NCBI RefSeq assembly: GCF_037042905.1
Contig: NC_087245.1
Coordinates: 14,322,001 to 14,386,000, forward strand
DNA: 64,000 nt
Reading direction: 5' to 3'
Origin: Lytechinus pictus
Taxonomy: Eukaryota
Below the pieces are notes generated by a model. That model was not told the DNA's origin, searched no databases, and worked only from the letters and a program-made list of their open reading frames with translations. A program made the position numbers and the translations under genes. Below are positions 4,307-37,015 of this stretch, piece after piece (the stretch's first letter is position 1; each line of letters begins with the position of its first letter).

Positions 4307-7300
4307 ATGACGCCGAACGTCACCGACAACGCTACGGTTCAACACCGGTTCATGCACGACCTCGGGAGCCCTGCCCAGATTGCCGAGATCCTGACGCTGA
4401 GCGTCATCCTAATCGTAGCATTATCGGCAAATATCGTGGCTTTCACTACGATCGTTCAGGATAGGAAACTGAGGAGTAATCCACATAACCTTCTCGTACT
4501 GAACCTCATAGTGATGGATTTGGGTATCGCTGTCCTCAGCATGACTTTCTCCATGATTTCAATCTTTGATGGCGGTCGGCTTCTCGAGGCTTTTCCAATC
4601 TTATGCAAGGTAAAAATCATTATTATTATAAAATTATGTACAGGGGTGGCGTCACGGGGCAGGGACAACAGGCCCTATTGTGTTTTGTTATTCTTAAAAA
4701 AAGAGGAGACAATGACAAAAGAGAGTAAAAAGAGAGTGAGAAAGTTATTTTTGAAAAAAAAAAAGGAAGAGATTGTGAAAAGAAAAGGCTTACCAGTAGT
4801 TGCGGAACTATGTAATCAATACTAAGCATACCCTTATTTTTTCACTGATAGAAAAAAAAAGAGAGAAAACATTTAAAGTTCACTACTTAAGTATACGCAG
4901 GCCCCGTCTTTTGCTATTTGAATGATATGAAGAGTAGGAGATCTAGCTGTTTGCTATAGAGGATTTGACAAATTGTCTGACGATGAGTGGCGACAAACTG
5001 GGTCCTCATCCCCACGCCGGAAGACCCACCACTCTTCTGCCTGGGCGATATTATGAGCACCAGATAAATATGATCCACTGATTACGTATAATTATGATAT
5101 ACATGGAGGTTCACTGTTACAAGTACTTCAACTCTGATTTAATTTTTTAATTCAATTCATTTCGAAAAGCAAGGTTTTACATTCAAAATCATTTGAGCTT
5201 AAAAAAGCATTCGAAAGCTTAATATTCAAATGTTGTCTACGCCCCTGCTGTAAAAGATGCAGCTAAAACATGTTGAGGCTGCAAAACTACATCCTAACAG
5301 AGCTTTCAGTTGCATTTGATGGGTGCCAAATGTATATTAGTGTGTTCGTTGACATGTTTTTGATAATATATGCGAATGAATTACGGAGAAATAATTGTTT
5401 TCATGATGAGTGTTCCAATGAACTAGTGTATAGCTTCAATAGACCGAGGTCAAAAAGCACTTTGGATATTATCAAGAATCGTGCTCTGGGGATAACTGAA
5501 ACCATAATGACCTTGTAACTCTTAATAGAATCGTGCTTCAAGCTACACTTTCTTCAGAATTTAATGAAGTGTTCGTCTTTCATCCAAGGATATCTGCAAA
5601 AGAATCATTACAATTCAATCGAATCGACTTCTTTAGACAATGGTGCATCATGGAATGGCTTTGTGAGTTTCATTACTTAAAGGTCAAGTCCATCCCAGAA
5701 AATAATTGATTTGAATAAATAGAGAAAATTTAAACATGAATAACGCTGAAAACTTCATCAAAATTGGATGTAAAATAAGAAAGTTATGACATTTTAAAGT
5801 TTCGCTTATTTTTCACAAAACAGTTCTATGCTCAACTCAGTGATATGCAAATGAGAGAGTCGATGATGTCACTCACTCACTATTTCTTTTGTTTTTTATT
5901 GTTTGAATAATACAATATTTCAATTTTTAATAATTCGACCATTAGGAACCCCTTGCTTGAACCACAAATGTTAAAATAATGGAATTGCATGTGTTCAGGG
6001 AGGAATGAAACTTTGTTTCACATGACAATGACGAAAAAAATCCAAATATTTCATATTTCATATAATAAAATACATAAGAAATAGTGAGTGGATGATGTCA
6101 TTGGTCCCCTCATTTGCATGCCGACCAGGATGTGCATATAACTGTTTTGGAAAAATTGAGTGAAACTTTGAAGTGTTATAACTTTCTTATTTTACGTCCG
6201 ATTTTGATGAAATTTTCAGTGTTATGCTTGTTTGATTTTTCTCTTTCTATTCAAATCAGCTTTTTGTTGGGGTGAACTTGTCCTTTAAATGTTGAAAACT
6301 TTCCAAATTGAAAAAAAGAATAGAAAAAAAATTGAAGACAGGTATATTTCTTTTATACTCAATTTTATGTTCACATGATAGGGTAGTACATCATGACAAT
6401 TTAGTTTCTCATAAGAATATTGCAATAAGTGAGAATAAAAAACATGGTTTTTCTCGGAATGTTCTAAAATGGACCTAACCCCTTTTGCAACTAAACTCTT
6501 CAAATATAGACCCACTTGAATGATAACATGCTAATTAACTACTCAATACATTACCGCAATAATTGTGTTACCAAGTAGCAAAACAATTTTTTCCTCTCAA
6601 AACATTTCTCTATACAATTTAAAGGTCAATTTATTCTCTGTAGTGTTAGTAGATATCTGGAAACGTATATTTTAAGACTATGAGAGACCATCCACACACA
6701 TTAAGTTCACACCCCTTTAATGTTTTCTGTACTGCATTGTATCACAAATTCGCTTATGCCGCTTGTTTGGCGCATGGAAATAAAAGAAATGTTGGCGTTT
6801 CATGTGTAATACAATGATTATCTCTTTTTTATGGGTTAATTGATAAACCTTTCTTGTATAAATCATTCACAAACGAAATGATATTGCACGTATTGGAAAA
6901 CTGTAGGCCTACTCAATAATACAAGTACTACGATGAATGCAAAATAACCCTTGAAATATATCATGATTGGGTACGTAGCCATTAGCCAAATTGATAAAAG
7001 TAAATGGCGAATCCATGGAAACTCCACACTACTTCACCTAACAATTTCAAATCGTTTACTCTTTCATTTCATTTAAACCAGAGGCAGAGGCGTACGCAGG
7101 GGGTGGTGTAAGAGGTGTTCAACACTCTTCAATTTTTGGATACCCAACCCCCCTAAAATTTAGTTTAAGACCTTTTTTTTTGCTTGTCGAATTTTTTTTT
7201 GAGGTACGAAAGCAAAACGACGTAACATTTTTGGTGAACACCCTTTTTTTTTTTTTTGGGGGGGGTTGTCAACATTTCATTCAGCTTGAACCCCCCCCCT

Positions 7301-10300
7301 CAACAATCATGCGTACGCTACTGATTTAAACTACTCTCTAGCAATGACACAATATTTGAAAATATGAAAGGGGATAACACAACCTATATTTCTAATTAAA
7401 AAACAACAACATTTCTAAAGATAGATGGGTAAAAGAAAATAAGCAGTTTCAATCGCAGAAAAAAATCTTAAAATCCATTGCACTCCCTATTTATTTGCCA
7501 AGCATGCAAGTATTTGCAATAAAAACGTTTTTCAATCTCGCACAAAAGGTGAAGTACGACCAGTTAAATGGTGACAAAATGATTATTGCCATGACAGAAA
7601 CAATTAAGCTTTCCCACCTTAGATTATAATGTTATCACACCGCTCTTTTATCTGTAACAACCTTTATTTTTAAAAAGCATTCAGTCACTAAAAGCACAAA
7701 CCAATAAAAAAATACTGACATAATATCCCCTCTAGTTATTTTTAATAATTTCATCTTCATTTAATTATTTACATGCTTTTCTTTTGCAGATCAATGGCTT
7801 TGGCGCTTCTATGTGCACCATAGGAAACTTCGCGACTGTCTTGTTCATTTCAACTGACCGGTTAATGGCGGTTGTTTGGTCTGCTCGCTATCCGTCTTCC
7901 CGTAAGCGGGTAACCGTCATGATCGTCATCATCTGGATCATTTCGCTATTGGTCGGCATAGCACCGTTGACTGGTGAGATTCTGCTTCTTTTGATCCATC
8001 AGACGATGTACGGAATTCTAAGATTATCATAGCAGGGGTCGCGGAACAGTTTTTAAACTGGGGGGAGGGGGGGGGGCTGAAAATCATAATCAGATGGTAA
8101 TTTTTACGTTTTTGAACACGGGTTTGGGAAAAGTGGGTGGGGGGCTGAAACCCACCATGCCCACCCACCCCTACCCTCCGTTTCCGCGGTCCCTGCATAG
8201 ACCTTATAAAAGGTGGTTCTCAATATGATGGAAGAAAGGTGACCTTTGTGTTCATGTCAAAGAATTCAGGGGATAAAGGGAGAAAACCCTTCTTTCCCAA
8301 AAGAGGTTGAGTTTTGTCACAAAAGGCTTAGAATCATACTAGGGAGTATTCGCAATTGCGACGCTAACAAATTCTACAACGTAGGCCTATAACATTTATT
8401 GTCAAAATGACATTCATGACCAAGCAGTAGGCCTATTTTTGAAAGTTGGTGGACCAAAAACAGCAGTTTCATCTTTGACTCCGGACAAACGACACATTCG
8501 CATTTCTTCGTCAGCTCCGAATATTACGACGATCAGCTGTCTCGGTTCACCAATCTTTGACAGAGGCCTATTCCTACAGTAACATTAATAATGCGAGCGT
8601 GAGGCGCGAGCAAAAAATTATCGATATTCTGATCTGAAACTGGATAATTCAAGCACGTTTTAAATAAAGAACAAGTTGCGTATCTCAATAAACATGCCTG
8701 TGCGTGTTTTAGACCTGCATGCATTCTGAATACATTTTCCAATCATGAAGATCAATAATGCAAGCTCGAAGCGCGAGCTGAACACATTTGGTATTCCGAT
8801 CTGAAAAGGGTCAATTCAAGCACTATTTCAAGCACTGTGTAGGAAAATTGTAAAGTGGATGTGGATCACACTTAATGAATAATGCGAGCGCGAAGCGCGA
8901 GCTGATATTTTTTAAATCATTATTTTGACCTTGAAACGGGACATTCTAAGGACATTTTGCCATCATATGAAAATGGTGACTATCTTCCTATTATTCCTAA
9001 GCGCGAGATGAAACTTGTCGATATTCCATTGTGTAATAGGGCCAATTTAGTTATAAGGAATTCATGAAAATTTTATTTTCTTATTTATTAATCTAATATG
9101 CTTAACCAGAGCGTGGAATTTGTTGATATTTAGGCCAAAAAAATGGACATTTTAAGCATTTTGTAGTTATGAATAGGACGCATTGGTTAATATTATTTAA
9201 CAATGCGAGCGCAAATCGCGAGCCGAATTTTTTTATAAACTGTAATGAAAAGGGGATTTCCTAAGTAGCTTGTTATAGAATTAATATACATGTAAAGGTA
9301 TACATAACTCACCAATCAAAATGAACCTGTAGTAGAACCTGCTCTTATTATGATCATGCGACGAGAATTTAAAACCAAATCGATGCACCAATATTTTTGG
9401 AACAGTGACAAGTCTTATTGCCATGTCCCTCACCAAGGTATGACATAGCTAAAAAACAAGTCGTACGATTGATAACCTTCAATATTCATGTCCATCAAAT
9501 TAAAAGAACAAACTAATAAGTCCATCGATTAAGCTGTCTTGGGTACTGGAATTAAGGTGTGTTTTGGTATTTTCCCCATGATTTATTTCATGGACCTAGT
9601 AGGTCCATGGTTACTTCAAAGGAAGAACAAAAACACTTCCAAATTATTACGTGATGAGCCAGGTGTGCGGCCTTTTCAGTGCATACATTATCTTTTGTTA
9701 GGAACACTTTAACTCCCTCCCTTCGTAACAAAAATGCCATTTAAAAACGTCACCTGAACCGAATTAGTTTGGACTTTTATTATGTTACAGAGCGCCTCTC
9801 CTACTACCATTATAGCAGTTCAACCCATCACTGCTCTCCGGCATGGACGAACTGCATCTTCTATGTCTTTAACCTTACCTTCATCTACGGACTGGCAGTC
9901 CCCACCATGCTCATCTCTCACGCTTTTATCATCTATAAATTGAGAGCAAAAGAGAAGAAGCTTAGATCGTATGGTGTCGGCAAGTCAGGGCAAGCTCAGG
10001 CAAGCAATCCGGAGAAACATATCAGTACTTTATCGGGATCAGCTGGAATGGGAACTGACATATCTATGGAAGGCAAGTGAAGTAGAACGGAGAATGGATC
10101 TTAGAAAAGAGGGGCCAAAGAAAGTGGGCTGAATTCCTAATATTTGCTCCTAACATTTGACTAGATAGGGGCATTGTTATCACTTCAGTAAATATAGATT
10201 AGACATAATTGTGGACACCCAACCCGACACCCCGCTCGACACATTCTGTGGATCCTCGGGTGTTGCTGTTTTTTTTTTTCTTTCTTCCTTTCGTTCTTTC

Positions 10301-14930: not shown

Positions 14931-17900
14931 TTAGTAGGTGTAGTGGTTTGTGCTGTCCCAGTGGGCAACATGTGGAGCCCTCAGTCCCATCTCCCCGTCG
15001 GGTATCTTGGGCATCGGGAGGTTCTTGCCGGTGAATTGAGGAAGGTTGCCGTAGTTATGCATGTTTCTGATGCCGGGGTAGACTGGAGCAATAAAGAAAA
15101 CCAAGAAACGAACGGATCAAAATGATGGGGAAAAGGAGGTGGTTCTGACTCTTTGAGGGTTAATATGTTTATTTCCTTCATCAAGAAATTCATCCATATT
15201 GTGCTGCACTCAACCCAGGTAAGATGAAAGGCTACCCAGCAAGATTAATTACTTGAATGCAGTAAGCATGTGAACATCAGCTCAAGCTAAAGCAGGGTAT
15301 CCAATATGTGCCTCAAAAAAGCTAAATTCTAAATAGATTTTGCTACATTTATCTTACTATTATTTCAGAAAGAGGTATTGTTACCTAATGGTGGTTGAGT
15401 CCTTTCAAATGGTAGGTTTGGTTTCCGATCTCGCTTGGGCCAGTTAGGATCATGCTCCGGGTAGATGTTGGTCATTTCTTGGATGTGCTCAAAGACACCG
15501 GGTTTGCTGGCCTCTGGGTGGTGTGTTCCTGAGGACCACATTGTGGTCTGTAACAGGGTAAAAGAAGAAAATCATGAAGTTAAATTTGAAGACAGCATAA
15601 AAGATTTCAAAATCATTTCCTGAAATGACAAATGTTGTGTATAAGACGTACTCAAAGACACCAGGTGGGTGTTTTGTAAAGCTGTCTGTAAAGTTACGCA
15701 TGAATTTACACAAGACTGAAACATGTTCTTAGGTGCTAAATCAATTACATGAAGCTGTTCATAAGTTACATGTAAGAAGGACTTTAAGAGTAACTGGTGA
15801 TCCTTTCTTGTGATAAATAGTATACACCAAAATGTTCATTGGGGATGGTTTAGTGCATAAGAAAGGATCACCAGTCGTTCTTAAAGTAGTTCTTGACTTA
15901 CCAACAGCTTTATGAAAAATCCACCAGGTGGGTGTTTCATAAATCTGTCTGTAAAAGTTAGGCATGACTTTATGCAAGACTGGAACATGTTCTTCAGGTG
16001 CTAAATCAATCACATATAGTGATATATCACTTGTAACTTTTGATTCTGAGACCAATTGATGTGAGGGGCCATAGCCCTTCTGTGATTGAAACAATCTCTT
16101 AATTATTGACATGTGCTGAGTAAAGATTATTGAAGCTTCATCTGTACATGTATCATTGTATGTATCCTGTTTACTGTGTATAAGCATACAAATACTTGCC
16201 ATCAAAGTTGTGTTAAATATCACGTCTGTGCCATTGCATAAAACTTTCCAGGTTTTTTTTCCTTTTTTTTCTTTTTCTTTATCATTATTATTTATATATT
16301 TTTTCTTTTTTTCTTATGATGTTATGATTACTTGTAAATAGTTTAATTATGTTTGATTTGTTATTTTTGTTTATACTTGGTCTGTGTTGACCCAATAAAA
16401 CATATAAATACCCCAAAAAAGATTATTGAAGCTAGCCTGTGTTAAAATAGTGTTCATTTTGACGAAGTGAAATTTGTGTAGTGCCCTTGTAAACTTTGAT
16501 CAGTTTCTTTAACAACCCAGTTTAGAATGATAAGGAGGTTTCATTGTACATGTTTTAGTTTTGTTTTGTTTTTGTTTTTTTAACAAAAGGACAGTGCATA
16601 ATGTGACTGGGCTGATAAAACCTTGTATCTCAAAATCTAAATTTTTTTAGGGTGGCTTAGAAAAGGCTGTATTTCAAAAATATAGCAATGGTGGCAGTCT
16701 CATATTGTCTGGTAACAGTCTCCAGAACCTGTGAAGAAATCTTTCGAGGCAAAGGAAGGTTGATATGAAATGCTACCAATGTTATAACTCTAAGATCTAG
16801 CTTATTCTGAGTTCTCATCAAATTATTTAAATTTTGAGACACAAGGTTTTATCATCCTAGCCACGATATGTCTCTTAGAGGAAGAATTATGACATGCTTA
16901 CCATGGTTGAGTTTGATTGAATTTATCACAAATAGATGTACAAATATTATAATTAATTAAGAGCTAGGTAACTTACCATCGGATGTGAGTTGGTCCCTGG
17001 GTATGAATCTGATGTGGCAATCTTAGCATCATTTACATTTCTCATGAATGTTTCTGAGCCTTTTGGTTCTAAGCTTATTTCAGCTGGTGGGCTGCAGAGA
17101 CAGAAATAAAAGAAAACACATATTAATGAATAACATGATTGAGAAATAATAGAACACATAGATAAAAAAGAAGCAATTCCTATGCCGAGCCAACTGATTA
17201 ATTCCTACAAGCTATCTTGTAAGTTTTTAGCTGGGGATTTGGTCGAAACCAATTAGGGGCAATTTACAGAAAATAATAAAATATCAGTAATTAAGATGAT
17301 TGAGAAAAAATAGAATACATAGAATGCAATGGGACAACCATAGAAAAAAAAGAAACCATTTCAATGTCCAGCCAACTGATTAATTCCTTCAAGCTACAGT
17401 TGCGCTCAAAAGTTAGTGATCCTCACCACAAAATGCACTCCTTCATGCTGATTGCTGAATGTAGACAACAACAACAATACAATATTTGGCGAGCCCAGAC
17501 AAACAAACTTTATTGAATGTAATATCCTATCACCTGACTTCAAAATCAGATATTATCTAAAGCATGGCAGAAATTGAACACTTTAAATATGTTCATTTTC
17601 TGGTGGGGTTCACTAACTTTTTAGCACCACTGTATGTATCGGATGCCAAAACAATGCGTCATTAAGATATGAAGAAGTAGATTACAACAATACTAGTTTC
17701 AAGCATTTTCATGATAAACAACTTTTAGTTTTAAAGTGGCTTTATTGTGCTTATAACTCACCTGCCCAAATTACATGATTTTATCACGTGTGAAGTGTTG
17801 AAATTACATGTACATGCATTCGGATTATGATGAGTTCCATTTATATTCTTTTACAAAATACCAGTTGGTAATCATTCTCTGAAAATGCATGAAACTTGCA

Positions 17901-20900
17901 TAGATGTATTTGTAGCTTTCTATTGGTGTAAAATTCACCAATTCCATATTTTGCTTTCATAGAGACATCTTAACATTTAGGAGCAAAATAATTTCAATAG
18001 CTATCCAGATTGACCATACATTCGAACCATGATAAGAAATCATTCTATGAAGAACATCAACCCTAACTAAACTTACGTTTTGGTCAATCCTCCAGAAGTC
18101 ATCTCTGTGGGTCCTTTAGAAACAGTGTTCATTCTCTGTCCTACTCCACTATCAATTCCCACTGTGTCGGTTCTGAAGAGGGTTTGCTGGTGATGTGTTT
18201 CAAGTTCCTAAAAAGAAAGAAACCATCATTCTAATGTTGTTACAGCTATTCATCTATAAAAAGAAGACCCCAGTACTACACCCATCTTTATTAATTATGA
18301 AAAAAAATATATATTACCGGATGTTTGTGCAGGAGTCGATGGTGTCTAGTGTCATTAAAAAGTGAATTTTCTCATGATTTGTATTGGCACTAATTAATGT
18401 TCAAGCATTAATGTAAGTCAGGGGCCGATTGCACGAAAGGGTCTTTCCAAGGACCGTCTTTCGTGTCGCCCATCTTTTATGATGCGCTATAAGCGGGGTG
18501 TTTCTGAAATTTATGATAAACAAACAAAATTCGTAGGCTTGCTTTTAAATCAAATTTTATACAATTTCATGAGATATCACATCATTTTATAAACAAATAT
18601 TTTGTTTATTTTAACGGACAAATAAAATATATTTGCAGATAATTTATTTGAAATGCGTTTCACATGGCGTATCATAAAAGATGGGCGACACGAAAGACGG
18701 TCCTTGGAAAGACCCTTTCGAGCAATCGGCCCCAGGTCGTCAAGACATACATGATAGACTGATTGCAATTGCTCAGCTCCATACTCTTTTATGGAAAGTT
18801 TATGTAGCATATTTTGAAACTAAACTATTGATGTCACTGTACTTGTTCAATCTTGTGCAATGGTTAGAACTGCTCCTTGTTAGTAAAGAATCATTAGATA
18901 GAATTTCCTTCAGCAAGGAATTCATCCACAGTGTGCTGCATTTGACCCAGTTGAGGTAAATGGGTACCGGCAGGAAATAATTCCTCAAAAAGCTGTGTGC
19001 ACCTGAATAGGTAGCCTAGCTTACCCAGGTAATAATAATAGCAGGGCCCGCTGGGAGAACAGTTTTTTTAACTAAAGTGGCTACCTGGGTAAACATACCT
19101 TTATTATTATATTATCATAGAATCCTACATGTAAATGTATACCATTAATGTTTCAATAAGATTTTTTTCTTCTTAAGATGCCTTAGATACATGTACAGTC
19201 CAGACCAAAAAATGCACATTAGAAAAATTGATACATTGCCTGTATGAAGAAAACAGGGAATTTTACAAAAGCAAGGTTTAAAAATAAATGTCTCTCACCT
19301 CAAGAGCAGTTCTTATATCTTCAACATGTTGTGCTAGGTGTCTTTCAATGTATTCTTGACCATTGATAGCTGCACTCTTTTGGCTACACGTTCTCTTCAT
19401 TTCCTGTAGTACACTCTTTGCTTTCAAAACATTGGCTGTCAAAACTAAAATGATGCAAAAGTATAAGAAATATAATTAGCTTGAAAAACTTAGAGTAAAA
19501 ATAAATTGATTGAAATCATGTCTTTATTGATTCTAAGATAAACTACATGTTGACATACAATCCAGGTCATTGGTTCTATTCTGAATGCATGGCAGGACAG
19601 GCGCGTAGCCAGGGGGGGGCGGTGGGGGCGGTCGCCCCCCCCAAAACGTCCCCAAAAAGAAAAAAAAGAAGGGAAAAAAAGAGAGGAGAAAAGGAAAAGC
19701 GAAGGGAAGAAAGGGAAGAAAGGTAGCTTTGTGGGTTTTTCCTTTTATTCTTTATTTTTTTTTTTCAAAAAGAGAAACTCCTTCACTCTTGCTCTAAATT
19801 TATATATATGAATTTTGCTTCCGCGCTGCGCGCGGATAAATGACAATATTGCAGTTCTCCTCTGTTTCCCCCACCCTTTCTCTAACCCTTTTTTTCCACC
19901 TCAGCTATACGTGTTTCTTGCCAGTTCAAGTTCAAATGTATACATGAGGGCATGGAATTAGAGTAAGGTTAGGCCGAAGTGTATGAAGTCTTTTTTTTTT
20001 CAAATTGATCGCGAAACTTCTGGTCGGGTTGACTCCAGGCGGGTCAAATCTTTATATCAATTTCTGCCGTCACCTCCACTAGGGCAACTTCTCCCGCTTT
20101 TCAACTCATTATTTAACAACCATAATTTTGGGGCAAACGGGTTTCTAATTAAAAAAAAAGAAGGTATAAAATTCGTGTCGTATCAAATAAAAAAGTACAA
20201 TATTTTTTAAATCAAATTCTAGTAAATTTCATGTCATTTCCCTGCCCTGTCCTATTTTGCGCCCTCAGTTTGAAATTTTGAATGACACTTAAGTTTCTTT
20301 ATCGTTAAAAATGAAGCGCTTCAAGATTAGTCAAAGACATTATACATCATCCTTTTTATATAATTTTAATAAATCACAGAAGTTTCAACTTTTTGAGCGG
20401 TATTTTCCTTGTAATGAAGTTAAATAATCTTAGAAAATCAATTGAATTAGAACCGCTGGGTATAGAGATATCTGCATGTAATGAAACGTCCGACCTTTAA
20501 GATTTCAGAGTTTCATTGCTCTGCGCGGGGAAGAATATCTTCCTCCCGGCATATCTTCTCCTCTGTTTTGCGAGTTAAAGATATGCACTGTGGCTAAATT
20601 GTAATCAAATCTGATCTTTCCGAGGGAAGCATTCAATATGACTTAGAGAATACCATTATTTCGGGACCCTTTTCTTTGCCAAAAAATTATAAAATGCATG
20701 AGCTTCCGCGCTTCGAGCGGGGTAATTATTATTATAATTTCCTTTATTTTATCCCTTTTTGTGCGTTCACAATCACTTTTGAAAACAAGATTCAAAATCA
20801 CAATAGAGTGAACTGAATTGGAGCTGATACAGGCAGGGTTGGAAACAGGTACTAGAGACAAGATAGACGGCTCCTTTTCATTTTAATTTATGAAACACCG

Positions 20901-21734
20901 AAAGCTTCGCGCTTCGCAAGGGAGGGGGAAACTCCCCCTCCCTGCACCCACCCCCTAGGGAGCGCGCTTCGCGCGCTCTGTAAGTGTTGGCACGCTTCGC
21001 GTGCACTTACCGCCCCCTCCAAAATGAAATCCTGGCTACGCGGTTGTGGCAGGACAATCACAAATGTACAATACATTAATTATAATCATATTATACAGAC
21101 ATTTATATATATATATATCACAGTAAAAATTGTAATTTTGGAATAAGGTGAAGTATGGTCGTGCATACCCCCTACAGGCATTAAAAATGAATTTAAAAAA
21201 ATATTATATTTAATATCATGCATTTAACTATTTCATTTATGCTTGACATGGCAAAATACACACATTAGATACAGTCCCAAGCAAACTTACATTTAAACAA
21301 ATAAGACACAGGTTAAAATGCTATATACAGATGAAAAATTACAACAGGAAATTGTCACAACAGGAAAATGAAAAATGATTTTCATATTCATTATCGTATG
21401 TACAAATACATATGAAATTAAAAAAGGAAACGTCGATTCCATACGTCCTACAAAGTGTACACATCTGGTAAATGATGATCCTACCTAGACAAAACTGATC
21501 AGACTACTCACATCTCACCAGTGGGCCATCCACCCAGTACTCTTTATTCTGCTTGACCTCTGGTCGAAGGTCACTGACCATCTTCCCCAAACGGTTCAAC
21601 ACTTCCCATGACCTTTCATCTATGACAGACTGTTGCCTCTGAAGACAGTTCAGACCCTCCAGAACACTGGTACAAGCATTGAAAAATTCTGCTCGGGTAT
21701 AAGGCGTTGCTGGATTAGCCGAGGTAACACTCAT
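14931..21734 (-). CDS. Uncharacterised protein A (309 aa): N-terminal helical-bundle domain plus Pro/Gly/His-rich tail
   Basis: Minus-strand coding exons 21734-21512, 19444-19299, 18207-18077, 17091-16977, 15547-15385, 15082-14931, all GT-AG with polypyrimidine tracts, in frame (930 nt). Starts MSVTSANPATPYTRAEFFNACTSVLEGLNCL, ends GLRAPHVAHWDSTNHYTY*. The ATG exon has an acceptor at 21754, so a non-coding exon lies upstream. Confidence 0.88.
15661..16015. mobile_element. Tandem/nested palindromic MITE copies in gene A intron
   Basis: Direct repeat of about 90 bp (15661-15750 vs 15924-16015) surrounding an inverted-arm element (AAGCTGTT...CTGGTGATCCTTTCTT / AAGAAAGGATCACCAG...AACAGCTT). Confidence 0.6.
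17397..17632. mobile_element. Tc1/mariner-type MITE
   Basis: TA|CAGTTGCGCTCAAAAGTTAGTGA ... TCACTAACTTTTTAGCACCACTG|TA. Confidence 0.7.
18422..18732. mobile_element. PIF/Harbinger (Tourist-like) MITE
   Basis: Near-perfect TIRs of about 60 bp (GGGCCGATTGCACGAAAGGGTCTTTCCAAGGACCGTCTTTCGTGTCGCCCATCTTTTATGAT) and a 3-bp CAG duplication. Confidence 0.8.
19598..21046. mobile_element. Non-autonomous hAT element in gene A intron
   Basis: TIRs CAGGCGCGTAGCCAGG / CCTGGCTACGCGGTTG; perfect 8-bp TSD TGGCAGGA (19590-19597, 21047-21054); no transposase ORF. Confidence 0.85.
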
Positions 21735-22816
21735 GATGAATAGTTGTTTATTCCCTGAAAGAAGTAGAAGTATGATGAACATCCACTTTTAAAAGATGTG
21801 GAGCTTCACAAGTGATAGTGATACTATGCTAACTTCTTTTTATCATTCTTTGTTTGTCTGTCAGCTGTCTGTAGGTCTACATGTATACTATATTAAAATA
21901 ACAATAAAACCAATAGGCAATATATTTTCATAGGAATAAAAAGAGCAGACGACAGTGGATCAGTGTAGGTAAGATTGCCTGTTACTGTTTGTTAGGCCGG
22001 TTACTAGTTACTGTAGTCTTAGCAATTACGCTATGCCTAGATCCTGTGTGTGAACCTGGACTGCGGGCCCCAGCAAAAATCTTCACCGAATGTCAAGTTA
22101 CATGTAATCTGCAATTGCCATAATAATCAAGTTTCCCATTAAGTACAGAAAGGGCGGCACATTCATTATTTGTACATGTATGCTTGTGAGTTGTGACGCT
22201 CATTAAGTTCAATCACACGTCGTCGATTGTCGACAGCTGTAATACTACTCAAGGTGGTGTGGACATAACCAAACTTTAGCCATAGCCTACATCGCACATC
22301 AACATTCAAAGGCAGGGACGAGATTGAAATTCAGCAAATGAGGCCCGTGTTCAGAAAATATATCAATTGTTAATACAAAGCTATATTTTAAGCATTTTTT
22401 TGTCATTCTAAATCTAAAGTCAAAGATAAAACTCATAGGCCTATATTTTTTCGCCTCGTTACTGCATTCTTGTTCTATTGGCATTAATGGCAATACCATT
22501 GGTCTGTGAAATTGATCTATGCTACATGTACGCGTACAAAATTGCTTTCGTATGCAGTAATATGCGCGTCCAGTATCATGACATGATCACGAGTGTCCTG
22601 TGTCTGTGATACAAATTATGATCATGATGATATGTGACCATTACAAGAAATTTTGAAATGACGAAAAAAATAGACACAAATTTGTGAAAAAAATAACGAA
22701 ACGGGTGGGACAACTCGGCCCGCAGCATTCTTCCAAAGTTCCAGTATTTGTGGTAAGGTAAGATTTTTGAGAGCTGAGAAGTGAGAGCTTGCCCTGGCCT
22801 GAGCCAATACCGAGCT

Positions 22817-23125
22817 TAGCCAGGCGGCTTCTTGAGAGTAAAAATCATTTACTAACGTAGCCTCGTAGGCTTACTATAGTATAAACGAAGCCAGGCAGTC
22901 CTCCCTATTCATCTGCGTGTAGGCCTACTAGTACTGCTACTGGTACTGCAAAAAACCCTGAAACTTTCGCCCCCGAGATTTCTACTTTCCTTCTAAAAGA
23001 TCTAGGATTAGGAACCTAGCTCTAATCATCTAAATCATGTAGGACCTACATGGGATAAAACTGGCTTCGTTTAGAGTAAGCCTACGTTAGTAAATGATTT
23101 TTACTCTCAAGAAGCCGCCTGGCTA
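22817..23125. mobile_element. MITE with long TIRs and 8-bp TSD
   Basis: TAGCCAGGCGGCTTCTTGAGAGTAAAAATCATTTACTAACGTAG and its reverse complement; ACCGAGCT duplicated at 22809-22816 and 23126-23133. Confidence 0.85.
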
Positions 23126-23411
23126 ACCGAGCTAGCGCGGACTGGCGTAGCCGTAGGCGCTTAGGCCGTATATCACCACCGTCCATTGGCATAGAGGCGG
23201 GACCGGACTGGGCCGGGGTAGGCGCGGGCACAAGCCCCCCGATGCGGCGACCCATGTTATACGGAATTACGGTAACGTTTGAATATAATTATAAATTGAT
23301 TTTCACATCATCAAATACTACGGTATGTTAAACGTCTTTATTTTCAACTTGTTAATAACTAATTAATTGTAGCCCCATCGGTTTTATAGAAATTAGATTT
23401 AGATTACTCAC

Positions 23412-23480
23412 AATTGTAGTTCAAAAGTTCAGCTAATTTTTAGTTTTTCTTAGTCGTGTTTTTGCAGCGCATACCGGTAC
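23412..23480 (-). other. Probable non-coding first exon of gene A
   Basis: Consensus minus-strand donor GTGAGT at 23411-23406 next to the CpG-richer region between genes A and B. The 5' limit is a guess. Confidence 0.45.
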
Positions 23481-24054
23481 GTACCGTACATACACGATAT
23501 GCAGCTAAATCATGAGCTGACCGACCTTACAAATTTTAGGTCAAACAAAATTGGTTCATTATAATTAAAAATAGATTTATTTATAGTTTAATTATTATTT
23601 TTAAGTACATTTAACTTACAAATTTAAAATAAAATGGTATATTAAAATAATTTAGAAAACCAAAATTACAATACTTGGAATAAATAATAAAAAAATATAT
23701 ATTAACGCGTTCACTTTTATTGTGATTAGCTTCATGCAAGCAGAAGTTTGTTGATAGCAACGGCCAGCTGGCACAATAACCCACGTGCAGTGATATTGTA
23801 TGTAAACAAAAGGGCGTTGACTACCGATCGCAAAGCTTAGCAAAGGCACGGTTTGCATCGGGTCTAACGTTCATAGTCTAAATAAAAAAAATGATGTTGA
23901 TTAAACTGCATGGTTTTTCTGTTTGATAGTTCTAATAGCTGAGTTCTAACCGCCACTTACTTCGAACAACACTCGCACCGAATTTAACCTGTTCTTCGGC
24001 TTCGAGCGATTATCTCTTGCCACTTTTATTTTGAGCAGACGCCACCAAGCAATT
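23480..24054. promoter_or_regulatory. Candidate bidirectional promoter of genes A and B
   Basis: Short interval between divergent 5' ends. RFX X-box-like GTTGATAGCAAC at 23750-23761, forkhead consensus TGTAAACAAA at 23801-23810, E-box CACGTG at 23782-23787. Confidence 0.55.
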
Positions 24055-27029
24055 ATGAATACCGACACCGCCCCGATACCCGCGGTCCGTCCCCCGGTGG
24101 ACAAGCCTATGCGGCTGGTTGGTGTTAGCCACAGTAACAACAGCTACAGCTTGGTCGACCATGCTTCGGCGAATGATCAGCTTCACCATATATTTTTGGT
24201 TGTAAAGCAGCACGTTGCTGGTAAGTAATATACTATAGGTCTGTGCTAATGATAGCCCCAGATCGTATATATCTTTCATTCAGTAGAACTCTATTTATGA
24301 AGAGGAAAAAGAATCAATAAAACAAATATTCAACAAGGTAAAAGACAAGGATTAAGATGAAAGAGAAGAGGACGGGAAAGAAGAAGCAGATGGTAATCCC
24401 TAACTTTGTTATGTCTAACAAGAAAGGAAGAGAGGGTATATGTTACTGAAAGAAACATAATAAACATCTTTGGCAAAAGATATAAAAAAACATGCATCAA
24501 AGAATTAATTTAATTGTGCTTTCAGAGTTCTTGTCTTAGAATTGCAAAACGATCTGTCCATGAAAACACAAAAAGTTGGTATGTACATGTATATCTTTTC
24601 CCATCTAATCTCGTTCTAAAATATCCACCAATTATTTTCCTGAGAGATATATAATCTACTTTTCTTGTCTAACGTTTGACATACAAGTCATACAATGTAG
24701 AATTCATCCATATTTGTTTTCCCCATCTAATATTGTCAGGTATCCTTGCTGATGTTCAGTATTACAAGATAGTTGACCTCAAGAATGAATTGATTGCTCT
24801 GGGTACAGATGTTGCTTCCCTGGAAAGAGACAGGGCTTTTGAGGAATCTAGGGATAAGTATCACAGACATTTCTGGCGAGCAGATGATGAAGCTGAAAAC
24901 AAACGTAAGTGTTTATAATTTCAAGAAAATTATTAGGATATAATATATATTATGTTACTGTAACTGACAATAGTAAGGCCTCAAACAATAAAGAGTCTAA
25001 AAACGAGCTAAATCCTCACAAAATGGTAAAATAATATTGTATACTTAATCTTTTATTTTGAATTACATCCCTACATGTATTCAAAGTTTTTATATTATCA
25101 ATTGTATCAATTATTTTGCCTAGAGCTGGAGATACTATGTGATTGATCAAATGAATTTTATTTGATTTTATTTTCCAAAAGGATAAGCTAGAAAAACTCG
25201 AAAGCTTATTCATTAATGTGCATGTATATGAACAAAGTTTTTTACTAATACAAACAGTCAAACACAAATATTATTGCTTGGGGAGAAGATTCATTTCAGG
25301 TTCTAACAAGAAAATTATGAATTATCAATCTGCAGAAGTCGTTATTCTTTACAAGAAGGGGGTACAGGCAGATGAGATAACAAGTCATTCTTCTAATCTT
25401 GTGGGATCTAGTTCTATTCAAAATGGTTTACTGAAATTAAAAAGGGAGGAAATTATTGTATAAAGCTTAATAGTTACTGAAGTTTAACTCTGAAAAAAAA
25501 AATGACACAATGTAAACAAATGACCTAATAGTTCTGTAAAACAAATGTTCTATAAATATGTAACATTTTTGTTATTGTTCTTTTTCTAGAGCTGATTGTG
25601 AAATTGTCTGAGGTTGCCTACGCACTTCTTGATTACAAACAGAACTGTTGCACAGAAAGCAGAGGTCCCTATGCATTAGATGAAGCAAGGCTTGAAACAC
25701 TTTGCAAAAAACACTTGTATGAATTACAGAATTTCAGAAGGGTATGTATTAAGCTTACTATTTGCTTTGACATTCCAATTTGCTGTGCTGATTTCACTTT
25801 TCATGAATATTATCAAGGATCTCTGGGTATTATTTGTGTTTAATGTTTCTCTGAGATTATTGTAAAATAATAGCATCAATCTGGAAGAAAGTATTATCGT
25901 AAGTAGTCATGCAAGGAAATGTCAGCCACATGTATGATTGTTATCCAGGTGCTGATAAACTTTTGTGTCAAGCTTTGGTCGTTCGTAAGGTACATTTTGA
26001 AAATATGATTATTTTGCCTTTTGTACATACATATCCAGGAACTTGCACAGTTTGTCAACACAGCCCGAGATCGAAATGCCCAGGTCACCCGCCTCTCCGC
26101 ACCCCTTCAGTCTCAACTCGAATGGCATCAGTACAAATCACCTCTAGATGACCCCAGTATCCGTCGACCTCTGCCCTATGAATGCACCCTGACCACCCGG
26201 GATACGATAGGCCCTAGAACTGACCCTCCAGATGTGGATGGGCACAAGTCAGGTGTCAAGCAATTACGAAGTCAGTGGGATGTACCAGATTTATCAGGCA
26301 AACCAGGAGCAGCTAATTCTGGTATGATTCATTTCAGTCATTTGTATGAGGTGATGTGAAGGCATCCATTATGAATATTCTCCATAATTGCCTATTACAA
26401 CAAAGCTTGCATAATATATTGATTCATACATTTGATTCCCTTCTTCTTATTTTCCTAATATTTTCACCAAACTTAGGAATCATCATGTGTAATAACAGAT
26501 CAAATGTGAAGCAGTTCCAAGCCAATTAATACAATTACTTTGTTTATTAAGAAGTTAAAAAGAAATACGTGACCTGCTTATTTGGCAAGGGAGAATATTC
26601 ATTTGCAGCAACATTATTTATTGTCATCTGTGATAAGTTGTAACTATATTGATTGCTTAAACATGGGATACTTCCATGCCAGCACAATAACATTATGAAA
26701 AAATAAAATATTTTTCCCAATACAATTATGTTCTTATGTTAATTATCATAAGAAATAGTATTTTTTGCTCCTGTATTTTTTGGTATGTATTTCATGAGGG
26801 GAAAAAATACATCCAAACTTAGAAAAAGAAACATCTGAAGAAAAACAGAATATTCAACCATTTAATTTTCATTGCCTATTTAGGAACACATGGAACCTTG
26901 ACTAGCCGAGGACGATATGGTGGCAGACATATCTATGAAAGGAACATCAACGAGAGAAGAAAACCAACTGAGCAAGAAATTCAACATGTTTCAAGCCGAT
27001 ACAAGCATTATCATGGACTATGTGAATAA
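24055..27029 (+). CDS. Uncharacterised protein B (303 aa), paralogue of protein A
   Basis: Exons 24055-24220, 24740-24904, 25590-25741, 26039-26321, 26884-27029, all GT-AG, in frame (912 nt). Starts MNTDTAPIPAVRPPVDKPMRLVG, ends RYKHYHGLCE*. AATAAA signals downstream (about 27365, 28235, 28295). Confidence 0.9.
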
Positions 27030-35206: not shown

Positions 35207-37015
35207 ATGTACAGGCCACAGCAACAAGAGGTGAGTCAATGAACTTGCACTTTACAATTCATTTATCTTGGTTTTTTTTATTTTTATTTTTTTACTTCTA
35301 ATACACTTTATGACATCAGCACTCTAAACATTTATAGAGTATTTTTTACTTATTCATTTCTATCCAGTTGTATTAGATTCTGTAGATTTGCTTGTACTAT
35401 GACAATGGATGCTGCATTTATTTTGTTTTATCAGTGATGATAATGAAAATNNNNNNNNNNNNNNNNNNNNNNNNNNNNNNNNNNNNNNNNNNNNNNNNNN
35501 NNNNNNNNNNNNNNNNNNNNNNNNNNNNNNNNNNNNNNNNNNNNNNNNNNNNNNNNNNNNNNNNNNNNNNNNNNNNNNNNNNNNNNNNNNNNAATATTAA
35601 TAATAGTAATAATGATGATGATCAACAAAATAGTCATAATGATATTGTTACTATACTGTAGATCGGCTCATACGTGCCTCGATATGTTTCTTCCAGCTTT
35701 TGATAACTGCTGTGGAGCAGGGAAACAAAGCGGAGGTTGAGACTTGTCTTAATATGCCGGGTACAGATATTAATGAAAAACCGGTAAGTATTTGAAATAT
35801 GTGTATACATATAGTGTACAAAGTAAGATCATGATCAGGATCATGATTTGAATGAAACACCTGATAAGTTTGTTGCAAACCCAGTAATTGAAAGCCCCCA
35901 AATGTTTAAAAACCCAATCTAAAGCTAAAAAAATGAAACCCTGTAAGCTGAATGCATGAATTCTGTGAATGAGAGTGTTTCTTCATATTTCCCCTAAATG
36001 TACTCTCTTGGTTTGACACACATGTATGTTATGTTCTCTATATACATGTTCTGTCCCACTCTTGATTTATCTGGCCCTATGTCACTCGTGAGCAATAATT
36101 TATTATTTACATGTTTTGTCTGTATGTAGTGGGGAATGGAGTCCTTGCTGATGAGAGCAATACGTTGCAACCACAAGGATGTGGCAGAACTCCTCATGGA
36201 GAGGGGTATTGATGTGGTGAGTAGAAACTTATTTTACAGGTTAATACTTTTCTTCAGGCAGCACCACAAGATGTGAACAATAAAAGTGGGGGGGGGGGGA
36301 AGAAGAAAATAATTAAGAAAACAGAGGGCTGTGTGCGCTTTGTGAGTCTATTATACCCATGTTATTCTATTGAGAAAAAAAATGGTCACATTTAGATCAT
36401 CATCCTTCCCTCCCCCTGACATTCCACACCCCTCCACTCTGGCATGGACATGGTCTATTATTTCAGGTGGTTAAAAATTGAAGAACATTATTAGTGGAAT
36501 TATCCATGCAGATAATATTTGCTCCCATGAAACCTAATGACATGGTTGGATATATTCCACATTTCTTTCCTCCTTATAACATATTGTCAAGCTTTTAAAG
36601 ATAAGACAATTGGATTGATTTCCATGTGAATTGAATGTCATAAACATTTTTAAGATTTTTAATTTCTTTTCAGTTTATTTTCTGCTGATTCCTTCAAGTA
36701 CTACTAATTAGTTTTAAAGTACTTTTGAAGTATTGTGAATACAGCATACAACTTTTATGAGAAATATTGTGCATATAGGTTACCAATAACATGATTTACA
36801 TAAATCAGGTGACGTATGAGGCCCCATTTTACTAACAGCCATATATGTTGTTTTCTGAAACATGAATGTTTTATTCCCAGGAACCAGACTCTCCAAGAAG
36901 TGAGACAAAGGATTGCAGACAAAAGTCAGCTAGAGATTATGCAGAGTTCTATGGAATGCCTGACATTGTTAAGAAAATTGATGAACAGCGGATTAAACGT
37001 ATGGCTAGACCTTGA
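35207..37015 (+). CDS. Small ankyrin-repeat protein (~110 aa)
   Basis: Exons 35207-35230, 35697-35783, 36130-36216, 36881-37015 (all phase 0, GT-AG). MYRPQQQE-LLITAVEQGNKAEVETCLNMPGTDINEKP-WGMESLLMRAIRCNHKDVAELLMERGIDV-EPDSPRSETKDCRQKSARDYAEFYGMPDIVKKIDEQRIKRMARP* gives two clear ankyrin repeats and a third degenerate one. An N-gap lies in one intron. Probable non-coding exon 1 ends near 33759 (GTAAGG). Confidence 0.8.
35451..35592. other. Assembly gap (N run)
   Basis: Run of n. Confidence 1.

What the first reader, a model, noticed from the sequence alone, without database searches (positions are those of the whole stretch)
14931..27029. Head-to-head pair of uncharacterised genes are hidden, highly diverged paralogues - candidate two-component module
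Seen in sequence: genes A (309 aa, -) and B (303 aa, +) diverge from a short shared interval, and their N-terminal domains align by eye despite low identity. A VLNRLGKMVSDL vs B ELIALGTDVASL (LxxLGxxVxxL); A EYWVD vs B HFWRAD; A FLTANVLKAKSVLQEMKRTCSQKS vs B QLIVKLSEVAYALLDYKQNCCTES (ungapped; L, L, K, C, S identical); A QEYIERHLAQHVEDIRTALE|EL vs B EARLETLCKKHLYELQNFRR|EL. The exon carrying the last two blocks (146 nt in A, 152 nt in B) has a phase-1 intron before it and a phase-0 intron after it at the same aligned positions in both genes, which is independent evidence of common origin. The C-terminal halves show no similarity I can detect. Inference: an old inverted duplication retained under one promoter suggests co-expressed partners, possibly a heterodimer.
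Basis: partly seen in the sequence, partly recalled or inferred. Interest (0 to 1): 0.85.

Follow-up and report, generated by a model that had tools for sequence, protein, structure and literature searches.

The report
Paralogous sperm-flagellum lumen proteins, head-to-head
The two divergently transcribed sea-urchin genes are real, anciently duplicated paralogues, but they are not unknown: they encode RIB35 and SPMIP12, two proteins already seen by cryo-EM inside the sperm-tail doublet microtubule. What looks new is that they are related and have stayed head-to-head since before echinoderms and hemichordates split.

Summary
The by-eye alignment is reproduced by a profile-profile comparison of the two families: A16-139 against B42-177, P 1.3e-4, score 38.6, against at most 30 in 122 control comparisons. 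Two introns coincide exactly in position and phase. Crinoid A and B match by plain BLASTP (E 8e-6).

The genes are not uncharacterised. A is the orthologue of RIB35 (PDB 8SNB chain 6Q). B is the orthologue of SPMIP12 (chain 4Y, labelled HeLo_like_N). Both are 48-nm-periodic inner proteins of the A-tubule of sea urchin sperm doublet microtubules, and they are listed at different protofilaments. "Parts of one machine" is therefore supported; "heterodimer" is not.

The head-to-head pair is conserved in echinoids, a starfish, a sea cucumber, a crinoid and two hemichordates, while the flanking genes differ. A forkhead-type site lies in the shared interval in 5 of 6 lineages.

This is a sound but modest finding: known proteins, with an apparently unreported evolutionary and regulatory link.

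The parts
21512..21734 (-). Gene A (RIB35 orthologue), exon 1: start codon at 21734-21732, 223 nt, followed by a phase-1 intron
   Evidence: 95% identical to S. purpuratus RIB35 over 74 aa.
19299..19444 (-). Gene A exon 2, 146 nt: phase-1 intron before it, phase-0 intron after it. Codes helix 3 and part of helix 4 of the four-helix bundle.
   Evidence: An exon of the same size is present in Patiria and Saccoglossus.
18077..18207 (-). Gene A exon 3, 131 nt. The intron after it (phase 2) is found only in the urchin.
16977..17091 (-). Gene A exon 4, 115 nt. Part of the poorly conserved linker, which is predicted disordered.
15385..15547 (-). Gene A exon 5, 163 nt. It ends inside the RTxPPxV motif.
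14931..15082 (-). Gene A exon 6, including the stop codon. Codes the conserved C-terminal tail (LPQFTG ... HWD ... Y).
21735..24054 (.). Shared interval between the two start codons (2,320 bp here; 304-595 bp in starfish, crinoid and hemichordates). Presumed bidirectional promoter. Acceptor-like sites just upstream of both start codons (about 21755 and 24038) suggest 5'UTR introns; this is unverified.
23801..23809 (+). Forkhead-type site TGTAAACAA, 246 bp upstream of the B start codon. CACGTG lies at 23782-23787 and an X-box-like GTTGATAGCAAC at 23750-23761.
   Evidence: The 9-mer occurs in the shared interval of 5 of 6 lineages; 0 of 100 shuffles reached 5.
24055..24220 (+). Gene B (SPMIP12 orthologue), exon 1, 166 nt. 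The intron after it is lineage-specific: it is absent in Saccoglossus and at another position in Patiria.
24740..24904 (+). Gene B exon 2, 165 nt, followed by a phase-1 intron in codon 111.
25590..25741 (+). Gene B exon 3, 152 nt: phase-1 intron before it, phase-0 intron after it. Counterpart of A exon 2.
26039..26321 (+). Gene B exon 4, 283 nt. Holds the RTDPPDV ... VPDLSGK motif.
26884..27029 (+). Gene B exon 5, including the stop codon.

Best explanation
A and B are the Lytechinus orthologues of RIB35 and SPMIP12. Both are microtubule inner proteins of the A-tubule of sperm flagellar doublet microtubules.

They arose by an inverted duplication before echinoderms and hemichordates diverged. 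Each keeps an N-terminal four-helix bundle, followed by a tail that is predicted disordered in isolation. In the cryo-EM model the tail is built on the tubulin lattice: all of B, and residues 236-310 of A.

The paralogues have specialised to different lumenal sites. B evolves slowly along its whole length. A has kept only the bundle and the last ~75 residues, joined by a variable linker.

The pair has stayed head-to-head, most likely because both genes are driven by one short bidirectional promoter active in cells that build flagella or cilia. This promoter may be forkhead (FOXJ1-type) dependent.

Shown: gene models, orthology to the PDB chains, paralogy, conserved layout. Taken from the literature: location in the A-tubule. 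Inferred: shared promoter, forkhead control, tubulin-binding role of the shared proline motif.
For: Identity of the proteins:
- phmmer against PDB sequences gives RIB35 (8snb_6Q, E 5.5e-217) for the A family's S. purpuratus member. It gives HeLo_like_N(LOC577943) (8snb_4Y, E 6.4e-191) for the window's own B protein.
- A published table lists both as A-tubule proteins with 48-nm periodicity.

Paralogy:
- hhalign of a 12-sequence A alignment against a 10-sequence B alignment gives P 1.3e-4, score 38.6.
- Controls: reversed profiles score 15-16. Sixty column shuffles score 15.9 +/- 3.0 (max 23.6). Sixty block shuffles score 19.4 +/- 3.8 (max 30.1).
- Two further collinear segments were found.
- The A profile hits crinoid B at E 1e-9. 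The B profile hits crinoid and hemichordate A at E 4.5e-7 to 1e-6, always in the same register.
- BLASTP of Anneissia A against B gives E 8e-6; Antedon gives 1e-4.
- Introns: A codon 75 phase 1 aligns with B codon 111 phase 1, and A 123|124 phase 0 aligns with B 161|162 phase 0. Both are ancestral in both families.

Structure:
- AF2 gives four helices in each protein, and they pair in the same order under the alignment.
- In Foldseek, each model's best hit outside its own protein is the other protein's 8SNB chain.

Layout:
- B lies head-to-head with A in L. variegatus, Patiria, Saccoglossus, Anneissia, Glandiceps and Apostichopus. The outer neighbours are different in each.

Promoter:
- TGTAAACA(A) occurs in the interval in 5 of 6 lineages.
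Against: - No expression data for this locus could be laid, so co-expression and the transcription starts are unverified.
- In the window the start codons are 2.3 kb apart, which is not a classic sub-1-kb bidirectional promoter unless both genes have 5'UTR introns.
- The forkhead core is a common AT-rich motif. It is missing from the Apostichopus interval, and an X-box scan showed no enrichment.
- The third ancestral intron has the same phase in both genes but does not coincide under the motif alignment.
- The primary paper (Leung et al. 2023, Cell) was not readable here. Whether it already notes the relationship is unknown.
Confidence: 0.8

Rival explanations
1. The two paralogues are obligate partners that bind each other through their N-terminal bundles as a heterodimer. 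The shared promoter exists to keep them stoichiometric.
For: - Both proteins are parts of the same 48-nm repeat of the A-tubule lumen.
- Linkage has been kept for more than 500 My.
- One listed RIB35 position (A13-A01) is next to SPMIP12's position (A11-A12), so a contact is geometrically conceivable.
Against: - The table lists different protofilament positions for the two proteins.
- The PDB entry holds two RIB35 chains but one SPMIP12 chain, which is not 1:1.
- No interface evidence was obtained here.
Confidence: 0.12
2. The genes are unrelated. Two helical-bundle proteins happen to sit side by side, and the similarity reflects helical composition or convergence imposed by the microtubule lumen.
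For: - Pairwise similarity in this species is below the shuffle mean.
- hhalign probability is only 54%.
Against: - Reversed and shuffled profile controls never approach the real score.
- Cross-family HMM E-values reach 1e-9 in a constant register, and crinoid BLASTP reaches E 8e-6.
- Two introns coincide exactly in position and phase.
- The top structural match out of 48,161 chains is the neighbouring gene's product.
- The two proteins have nearly equal lengths, and both families share an ancestral 4-exon plan with intron phases 1-0-1.
Confidence: 0.04
3. The genes are paralogues, but the conserved adjacency is a passive leftover of the duplication. The promoters are independent and expression differs, for example one gene sperm-specific and the other used in embryonic cilia.
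For: - The interval is 2.3 kb in the window and 1.75 kb in L. variegatus.
- Evolutionary rates differ strongly. B is 56-59% identical between urchin and hemichordate; A is 35-38%.
- No expression data are available.
Against: - The flanking genes differ in all six other ambulacrarian genomes examined, across five classes, while the pair itself stays intact and divergent with only 304-595 bp between start codons in four lineages. This is hard to explain without constraint.
- Both proteins are present in the same sperm structure.
- The interval holds a shared forkhead-type site.
Confidence: 0.1

Closest known systems
RIB35 (S. purpuratus LOC578017, UniProt A0A7M7THB5; PDB 8SNB chain 6Q)
   Same: Gene A is its orthologue: 271/310 identical. 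It has the same length, the same N-terminal bundle and the same conserved C-terminal tail. The conserved parts of the A family correspond to the residues built in the cryo-EM model, 2-135 and 236-310.
   Different: It comes from a different urchin genus. NCBI labels it only 'uncharacterized protein'. Its presence in the flagellum has not been shown for this species.
SPMIP12 (S. purpuratus LOC577943, UniProt A0A7M7RHW6; PDB 8SNB chain 4Y, labelled HeLo_like_N)
   Same: Gene B is its orthologue (E 6.4e-191 and about 90% identity). Residues 3-301 are built in the structure, which fits the high conservation of B along its whole length.
   Different: None of substance. The accessible literature does not describe it as related to RIB35.
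Other paralogous inner-protein sets of doublet microtubules (tektins 1-5, EFHC1/EFHC2 = RIB72/RIB74, CIMIP2A/B/C, SPMIP11 and SPMIP11-like)
   Same: Duplicated lumenal proteins that occupy different positions in the same 48-nm repeat (table read).
   Different: Those paralogies are obvious from sequence, and to my knowledge the genes are not kept as head-to-head pairs. Here the relationship is cryptic and the genes are tightly linked.
Conserved head-to-head pairs of genes coding parts of one structure (COL4A1-COL4A2, histone H2A-H2B), from general knowledge
   Same: Divergent orientation, a short shared interval, products that go into one assembly, and linkage preserved over very long times.
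   Different: In those cases the products bind each other directly and bidirectional promoter activity has been shown experimentally. Neither is shown here.
HeLo / HeLo-like (PF14479, PF17111), MLKL executioner domain, RPW8 and plant CC four-helix bundles
   Same: Both bundles resemble these folds:
- AFDB cluster hits are dominated by 'Fungal N-terminal domain'.
- Language-model neighbours of A include PigL_N, SesA and HeLo clusters.
- The PDB depositors labelled B HeLo_like_N.

Membership tests
RIB35 orthologue group (gene A) | Full-length sequence orthology to the chain deposited as RIB35 in PDB 8SNB | tested here: met
   P0001 matches 8snb_6Q over residues 1-310 at E 5.5e-217. The window's A protein is 271/310 identical to P0001.
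RIB35 orthologue group (gene A) | Physical presence in the A-tubule lumen of sperm doublets | not testable with these tools
   Shown by cryo-EM for S. purpuratus only. Inferred for this species by orthology.
SPMIP12 orthologue group (gene B) | Full-length sequence orthology to chain 4Y of PDB 8SNB (LOC577943) | tested here: met
A and B as one paralogous family | Statistically supported sequence similarity between the two families | tested here: met
   hhalign P 1.3e-4, with controls never above 30.1 against 38.6. Cross-family hmmsearch reaches E 1e-9. BLASTP gives E 8e-6 in Anneissia.
A and B as one paralogous family | Shared ancestral intron positions and phases | tested here: met
   Two of three ancestral introns coincide exactly in the hhalign register. 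The third has the same phase but does not coincide in position.
A and B as one paralogous family | Same fold and helix order | tested here: met
Bidirectional-promoter gene pair | Divergent orientation with a short interval, conserved across lineages | tested here: met
   The interval is 304-595 bp between start codons in Saccoglossus, Glandiceps, Anneissia and Patiria. It is about 1.5-2.3 kb in Apostichopus and the urchins. Outer neighbours differ everywhere.
Bidirectional-promoter gene pair | Correlated transcription from closely spaced start sites | not testable with these tools
Run indexes give only ambiguous shares.
HeLo / MLKL-type four-helix-bundle superfamily | Match to a family profile (PF14479, PF17111, PF17107 or related) | tested here: not met
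   No such hit for any of the 22 family members at E <= 10.
HeLo / MLKL-type four-helix-bundle superfamily | Specific structural similarity well above that of generic helical bundles | tested here: inconclusive

The most novel reading that the evidence does not exclude
The N-terminal bundles of RIB35 and SPMIP12 would be true evolutionary relatives of the HeLo / MLKL / RPW8 cell-death four-helix bundles. A fold known for attacking membranes would then have been recruited in the ambulacrarian ancestor as a structural brick inside the microtubule lumen, duplicated, and locked into a bidirectional, forkhead-driven gene pair.
Probability: 0.1. Interest if true: 0.7.

Novelty: already known. Interest (0 to 1): 0.38.

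Why it matters
Many inner proteins of sperm doublet microtubules are restricted to particular lineages, and their origins are obscure. This result shows that two ambulacrarian-only inner proteins, named as if unrelated, are one old family. It gives a concrete case of how the lumen gains new parts: duplication, followed by specialisation to different protofilaments.

The gene pair has stayed linked since before the echinoderm-hemichordate split. It also offers a compact candidate bidirectional ciliary promoter, only 300-600 bp in four lineages. This could be tested in Lytechinus pictus, an urchin in which genetic work is being developed.

The finding does not reveal a new kind of system. Both proteins already have a solved structure and a location.

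Tried and rejected
The two run searches returned only small word shares from runs of uncertain type and cannot show expression of either gene. Indirect evidence only: uninterrupted coding contigs of 1.2-1.3 kb for an A and a B orthologue in two Logan run assemblies look like spliced mRNA.\n- Other copies. Exon-level searches of the 812-Mb assembly found only the exons themselves. There are no further copies, and A exon 1 does not hit B.\n- Pairwise test in this species. The Smith-Waterman comparison was negative.\n- Pfam. No family was found for any piece or any full-length protein.\n- RFX X-box scan of seven intergenic intervals. There were 3 loose hits against about 2 expected, so no enrichment.\n- complex prediction on the two N-terminal bundles. 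The verdict was 'no answer', which is evidence neither for nor against binding.\n- Last exons. I tested whether the two last exons (149 and 143 nt, both after a phase-1 intron) are homologous. hhalign found no alignment of them; only the RTxPPxV and (L/V)PxxxG motifs align, and these place the introns about 30 residues apart.\n- Relatives outside Ambulacraria. None was found. An exhaustive phmmer of A exon 1 against 1.84 billion representatives returned only echinoderm or hemichordate relatives plus two low-complexity repeats. The B-profile search returned only the ten known members, but that tool needs shared 5-residue words.\n- Primary paper. PMC10948200 is not held.\n- Retrieval of B proteins. 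The length filter of the protein search excludes exon-sized queries. I therefore used an alignment of RIB35 plus B exon-4 pieces from four genomes.
Full report
**What is at the locus.** The window is animal DNA of about 36% G+C, from an 812-Mb assembly.

Gene B is encoded exactly by five plus-strand exons: 24055-24220, 24740-24904, 25590-25741, 26039-26321 and 26884-27026. Their product equals database protein P0016, which NCBI names 'uncharacterized protein LOC129261456 [Lytechinus pictus]'.

Gene A is encoded by six minus-strand exons: 21734-21512, 19444-19299, 18207-18077, 17091-16977, 15547-15385 and 15082-14934. All its introns are GT-AG. The product is 309 aa and is 303/309 identical to the L. 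variegatus orthologue P0008.

The two start codons are 2,320 bp apart.

**Is the similarity real?** In this species alone it is not detectable. The best local alignment of the two N-terminal halves scores 23, and 87% of shuffles do as well. In a six-frame search of the whole assembly each exon finds only itself.

I therefore collected the two families:
- An exhaustive phmmer search with A exon 1 and a full-length search gave A orthologues in echinoids, asteroids, crinoids and two hemichordates.
- B orthologues were reached with a mixed profile, because exon-sized queries are filtered by length. This gave ten proteins from the same groups plus a sea cucumber.

The family-level tests all support the relationship:
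- hhalign of the A alignment (12 sequences) against the B alignment (10 sequences) gives one hit: A16-139 against B42-177, score 38.6, P 1.3e-4.
- In the controls, reversed profiles score 15.0 and 16.2. Sixty column-shuffled B profiles score 15.9 +/- 3.0 (max 23.6). Sixty shuffles of 15-column blocks score 19.4 +/- 3.8 (max 30.1).
- Two more collinear segments appear as alternative alignments. A255-281 against B221-250 carries the motif RTxPPxV ... (L/V)PxxxG (P 0.005). A30-56 against B57-83 has P 0.17.
- Profile-to-sequence searches cross the families. The A profile hits Antedon B at E 1e-9 and Anneissia B at 8.8e-9. The B profile hits Antedon A at 4.5e-7 and hemichordate A at about 1e-6. All are in the same register.
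- In crinoids plain BLASTP suffices: Anneissia A against B gives E 8e-6 (30% identity over 61 residues), and Antedon gives 1e-4.

**Introns as independent evidence.** Exact exon chains were computed for proteins whose genomic loci were fetched.
- A has three introns shared by urchin, starfish and hemichordate. They lie at codon 73/75 (phase 1), before codon 122/124 (phase 0), and at codon 239-260 (phase 1).
- B has three shared introns. They lie at codon 111/112 (phase 1), before codon 162/163 (phase 0), and at codon 256/257 (phase 1).
- In the hhalign alignment, made without any knowledge of introns, A F75 pairs with B Q111, and the A E123|E124 boundary pairs with B R161|E162. Two introns therefore coincide to the nucleotide.
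- With about 370 possible positions in the aligned stretch, a double coincidence by chance is of the order of 1e-5 to 1e-4 (my estimate).
- The third intron has the same phase in both genes, but it does not coincide under the motif alignment.
- The remaining introns are lineage-specific: A codons 167 and 206 in urchins; B codon 56 in urchins and 63 in Patiria, with none in Saccoglossus.

**Structure and identity.** AF2 models built from the family alignments give, for each protein, a confident four-helix bundle followed by a low-confidence tail.
- A: helices 10-33, 40-62, 66-93 and 104-150.
- B: helices 39-59, 67-93, 99-134 and 142-177.
- The helices pair one to one under the sequence alignment.

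Searching the PDB changed the picture:
- A's model hits 8snb_6Q (E 2.8e-20) and B's model hits 8snb_4Y (E 2.1e-28). Both are chains of the 'atomic model of sea urchin sperm doublet microtubule (48-nm periodicity)'.
- By sequence, 6Q is deposited as RIB35 and 4Y as HeLo_like_N(LOC577943).
- A review table taken from the primary paper lists RIB35 (LOC578017, 310 aa) as A-tubule, 48 nm, protofilaments A06-A07 and A13-A01, built residues 2-135 and 236-310. It lists SPMIP12 (LOC577943, 302 aa) as A-tubule, 48 nm, protofilaments A11-A12, built residues 3-301 (PMC11834534).

The genes are therefore not uncharacterised. They encode two known microtubule inner proteins.

The built residues match the conservation patterns. 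A is conserved at both ends with a variable middle. B is conserved throughout: 56-59% identity between urchin and hemichordate, against 35-38% for A.

The structural searches also support the paralogy:
- In Foldseek, each model's best hit outside its own protein is the other protein's 8SNB chain.

**Conserved layout.** Looking up the genomic places of A or B orthologues shows the partner gene immediately upstream on the opposite strand in six genomes:
- L. variegatus: 303 aa partner, 1.75 kb between start codons.
- Patiria miniata: 303 aa, 595 bp.
- Saccoglossus kowalevskii: 304 aa, 304 bp.
- Anneissia japonica: 291 aa, 585 bp.
- Glandiceps talaboti: 302 aa, 325 bp.
- Apostichopus japonicus: a 313-aa gene with a 146-nt exon, upstream of B.

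tblastn confirmed the partner as the B orthologue in the first three.

The outer neighbours differ in every genome: a GPCR, RME-8, a sulfotransferase, TMEM237 and a nicotinic receptor, and a P450. Only the pair itself is kept. The duplication and the divergent arrangement therefore predate the echinoderm-hemichordate split.

No relatives outside Ambulacraria were found. The B search is limited by its word filter.

**The shared interval.** I had named forkhead (TGTTTAC) and RFX motifs as candidates before scanning.
- An unbiased k-mer comparison then found TGTAAACAA as the only 9-mer present in the interval of 5 of 6 lineages. None of 100 shuffles reached 5.
- From background rates, the chance of the 7-mer core being present in those five intervals is about 4e-5.
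- In the window the site is at 23801-23809, 246 bp upstream of the B start codon.
- Nearby lie CACGTG (23782-23787) and an X-box-like GTTGATAGCAAC (23750-23761). The same three elements are present in L. variegatus.
- The two hemichordates share a block holding the forkhead site, CACGTG and ATGCAAAT.
- A formal X-box scan showed no enrichment.
- Forkhead control, with FOXJ1 as the obvious candidate for motile-cilium genes, is an inference, not a result.
- Acceptor-like sites just upstream of both start codons suggest 5'UTR introns that would bring both transcription starts near this block.

**Partners or not.** Both proteins belong to the same 48-nm repeat, so 'two components of one machine' is right. 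A direct heterodimer is not supported. The listed protofilaments differ, and the entry has two RIB35 chains for one SPMIP12 chain. The decisive check, contacts in the 8SNB coordinates, could not be run here.

**HeLo likeness.** Several lines point to a resemblance:
- Both bundles resemble MLKL, Rx-CC, NRG1 and fungal HeLo-like domains.
- Language-model neighbours of A include PigL_N, SesA and HeLo clusters, at scores below the tool's 0.9 threshold.
- The depositors labelled B HeLo_like_N.

**Verdict.** The 'uncharacterised two-component heterodimer' reading should be replaced. The two genes encode known sperm microtubule inner proteins, RIB35 and SPMIP12. They are cryptic paralogues, kept as a divergent gene pair across Ambulacraria and probably co-regulated. 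The proteins and their structure are already known. The relationship, the conserved linkage and the candidate promoter element appear not to be in the literature I could search.

Noticed in passing
window 4307-4825 (+): This 172-aa ORF matches the start of the rhodopsin-type GPCR family (7tm_1, E 4.4e-6, below the curated cut-off). A 422-aa GPCR gene is also the outer neighbour of gene A in L. variegatus (L003 16866-24232).
   Followed up: partly
window 15575-16313 (-), inside intron 4 of gene A: Unusually long open stretches (up to 184 aa) with internally repeated peptide and DNA segments. A 41-nt direct repeat occurs at 15690 and 15954. No Pfam match. It looks like a repeat or mobile-element remnant, not an exon.
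   Followed up: partly
L005 9697-10000 and L009 9676-10000: The two hemichordate intervals share an ordered block: ACGTAACAACGCC, then the forkhead site TGTAAACAAT, then GGTCACGTGAC about 25-30 bp on, then TATGCAAATCA. This is a compact conserved promoter core in only about 300 bp.
   Followed up: partly
window 23100-23260: A short G+C-rich, CpG-rich island in the otherwise AT-rich shared interval. Only 23211-23252 is alignable to L. variegatus (83% identity). Its role is unknown; it could be a promoter, a 5'UTR exon or a repeat.
   Followed up: no
P0026 (Anneissia B, 291 aa), alignment A4 columns 224-235: The annotated crinoid B protein lacks 12 residues exactly over the conserved RTxPPxVxG motif and has odd flanking residues. 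This is probably a mis-called splice site in that annotation rather than a real loss.
   Followed up: no
L010 3748-8497 (-): In Apostichopus the gene head-to-head with B is annotated as 313 aa and has a 146-nt exon (7201-7346). It did not appear among the A-family hits of the protein searches. It is presumed to be the A orthologue, but this was not checked by alignment.
   Followed up: no
A 13-nt tandem repeat lies nearby at 19661-19692.
   Followed up: no
window 35451-35592, 48524-48716, 50772-51408: Three runs of N (972 bases in all). The long ORFs listed at 48389-51503 merely run through them.
   Followed up: no
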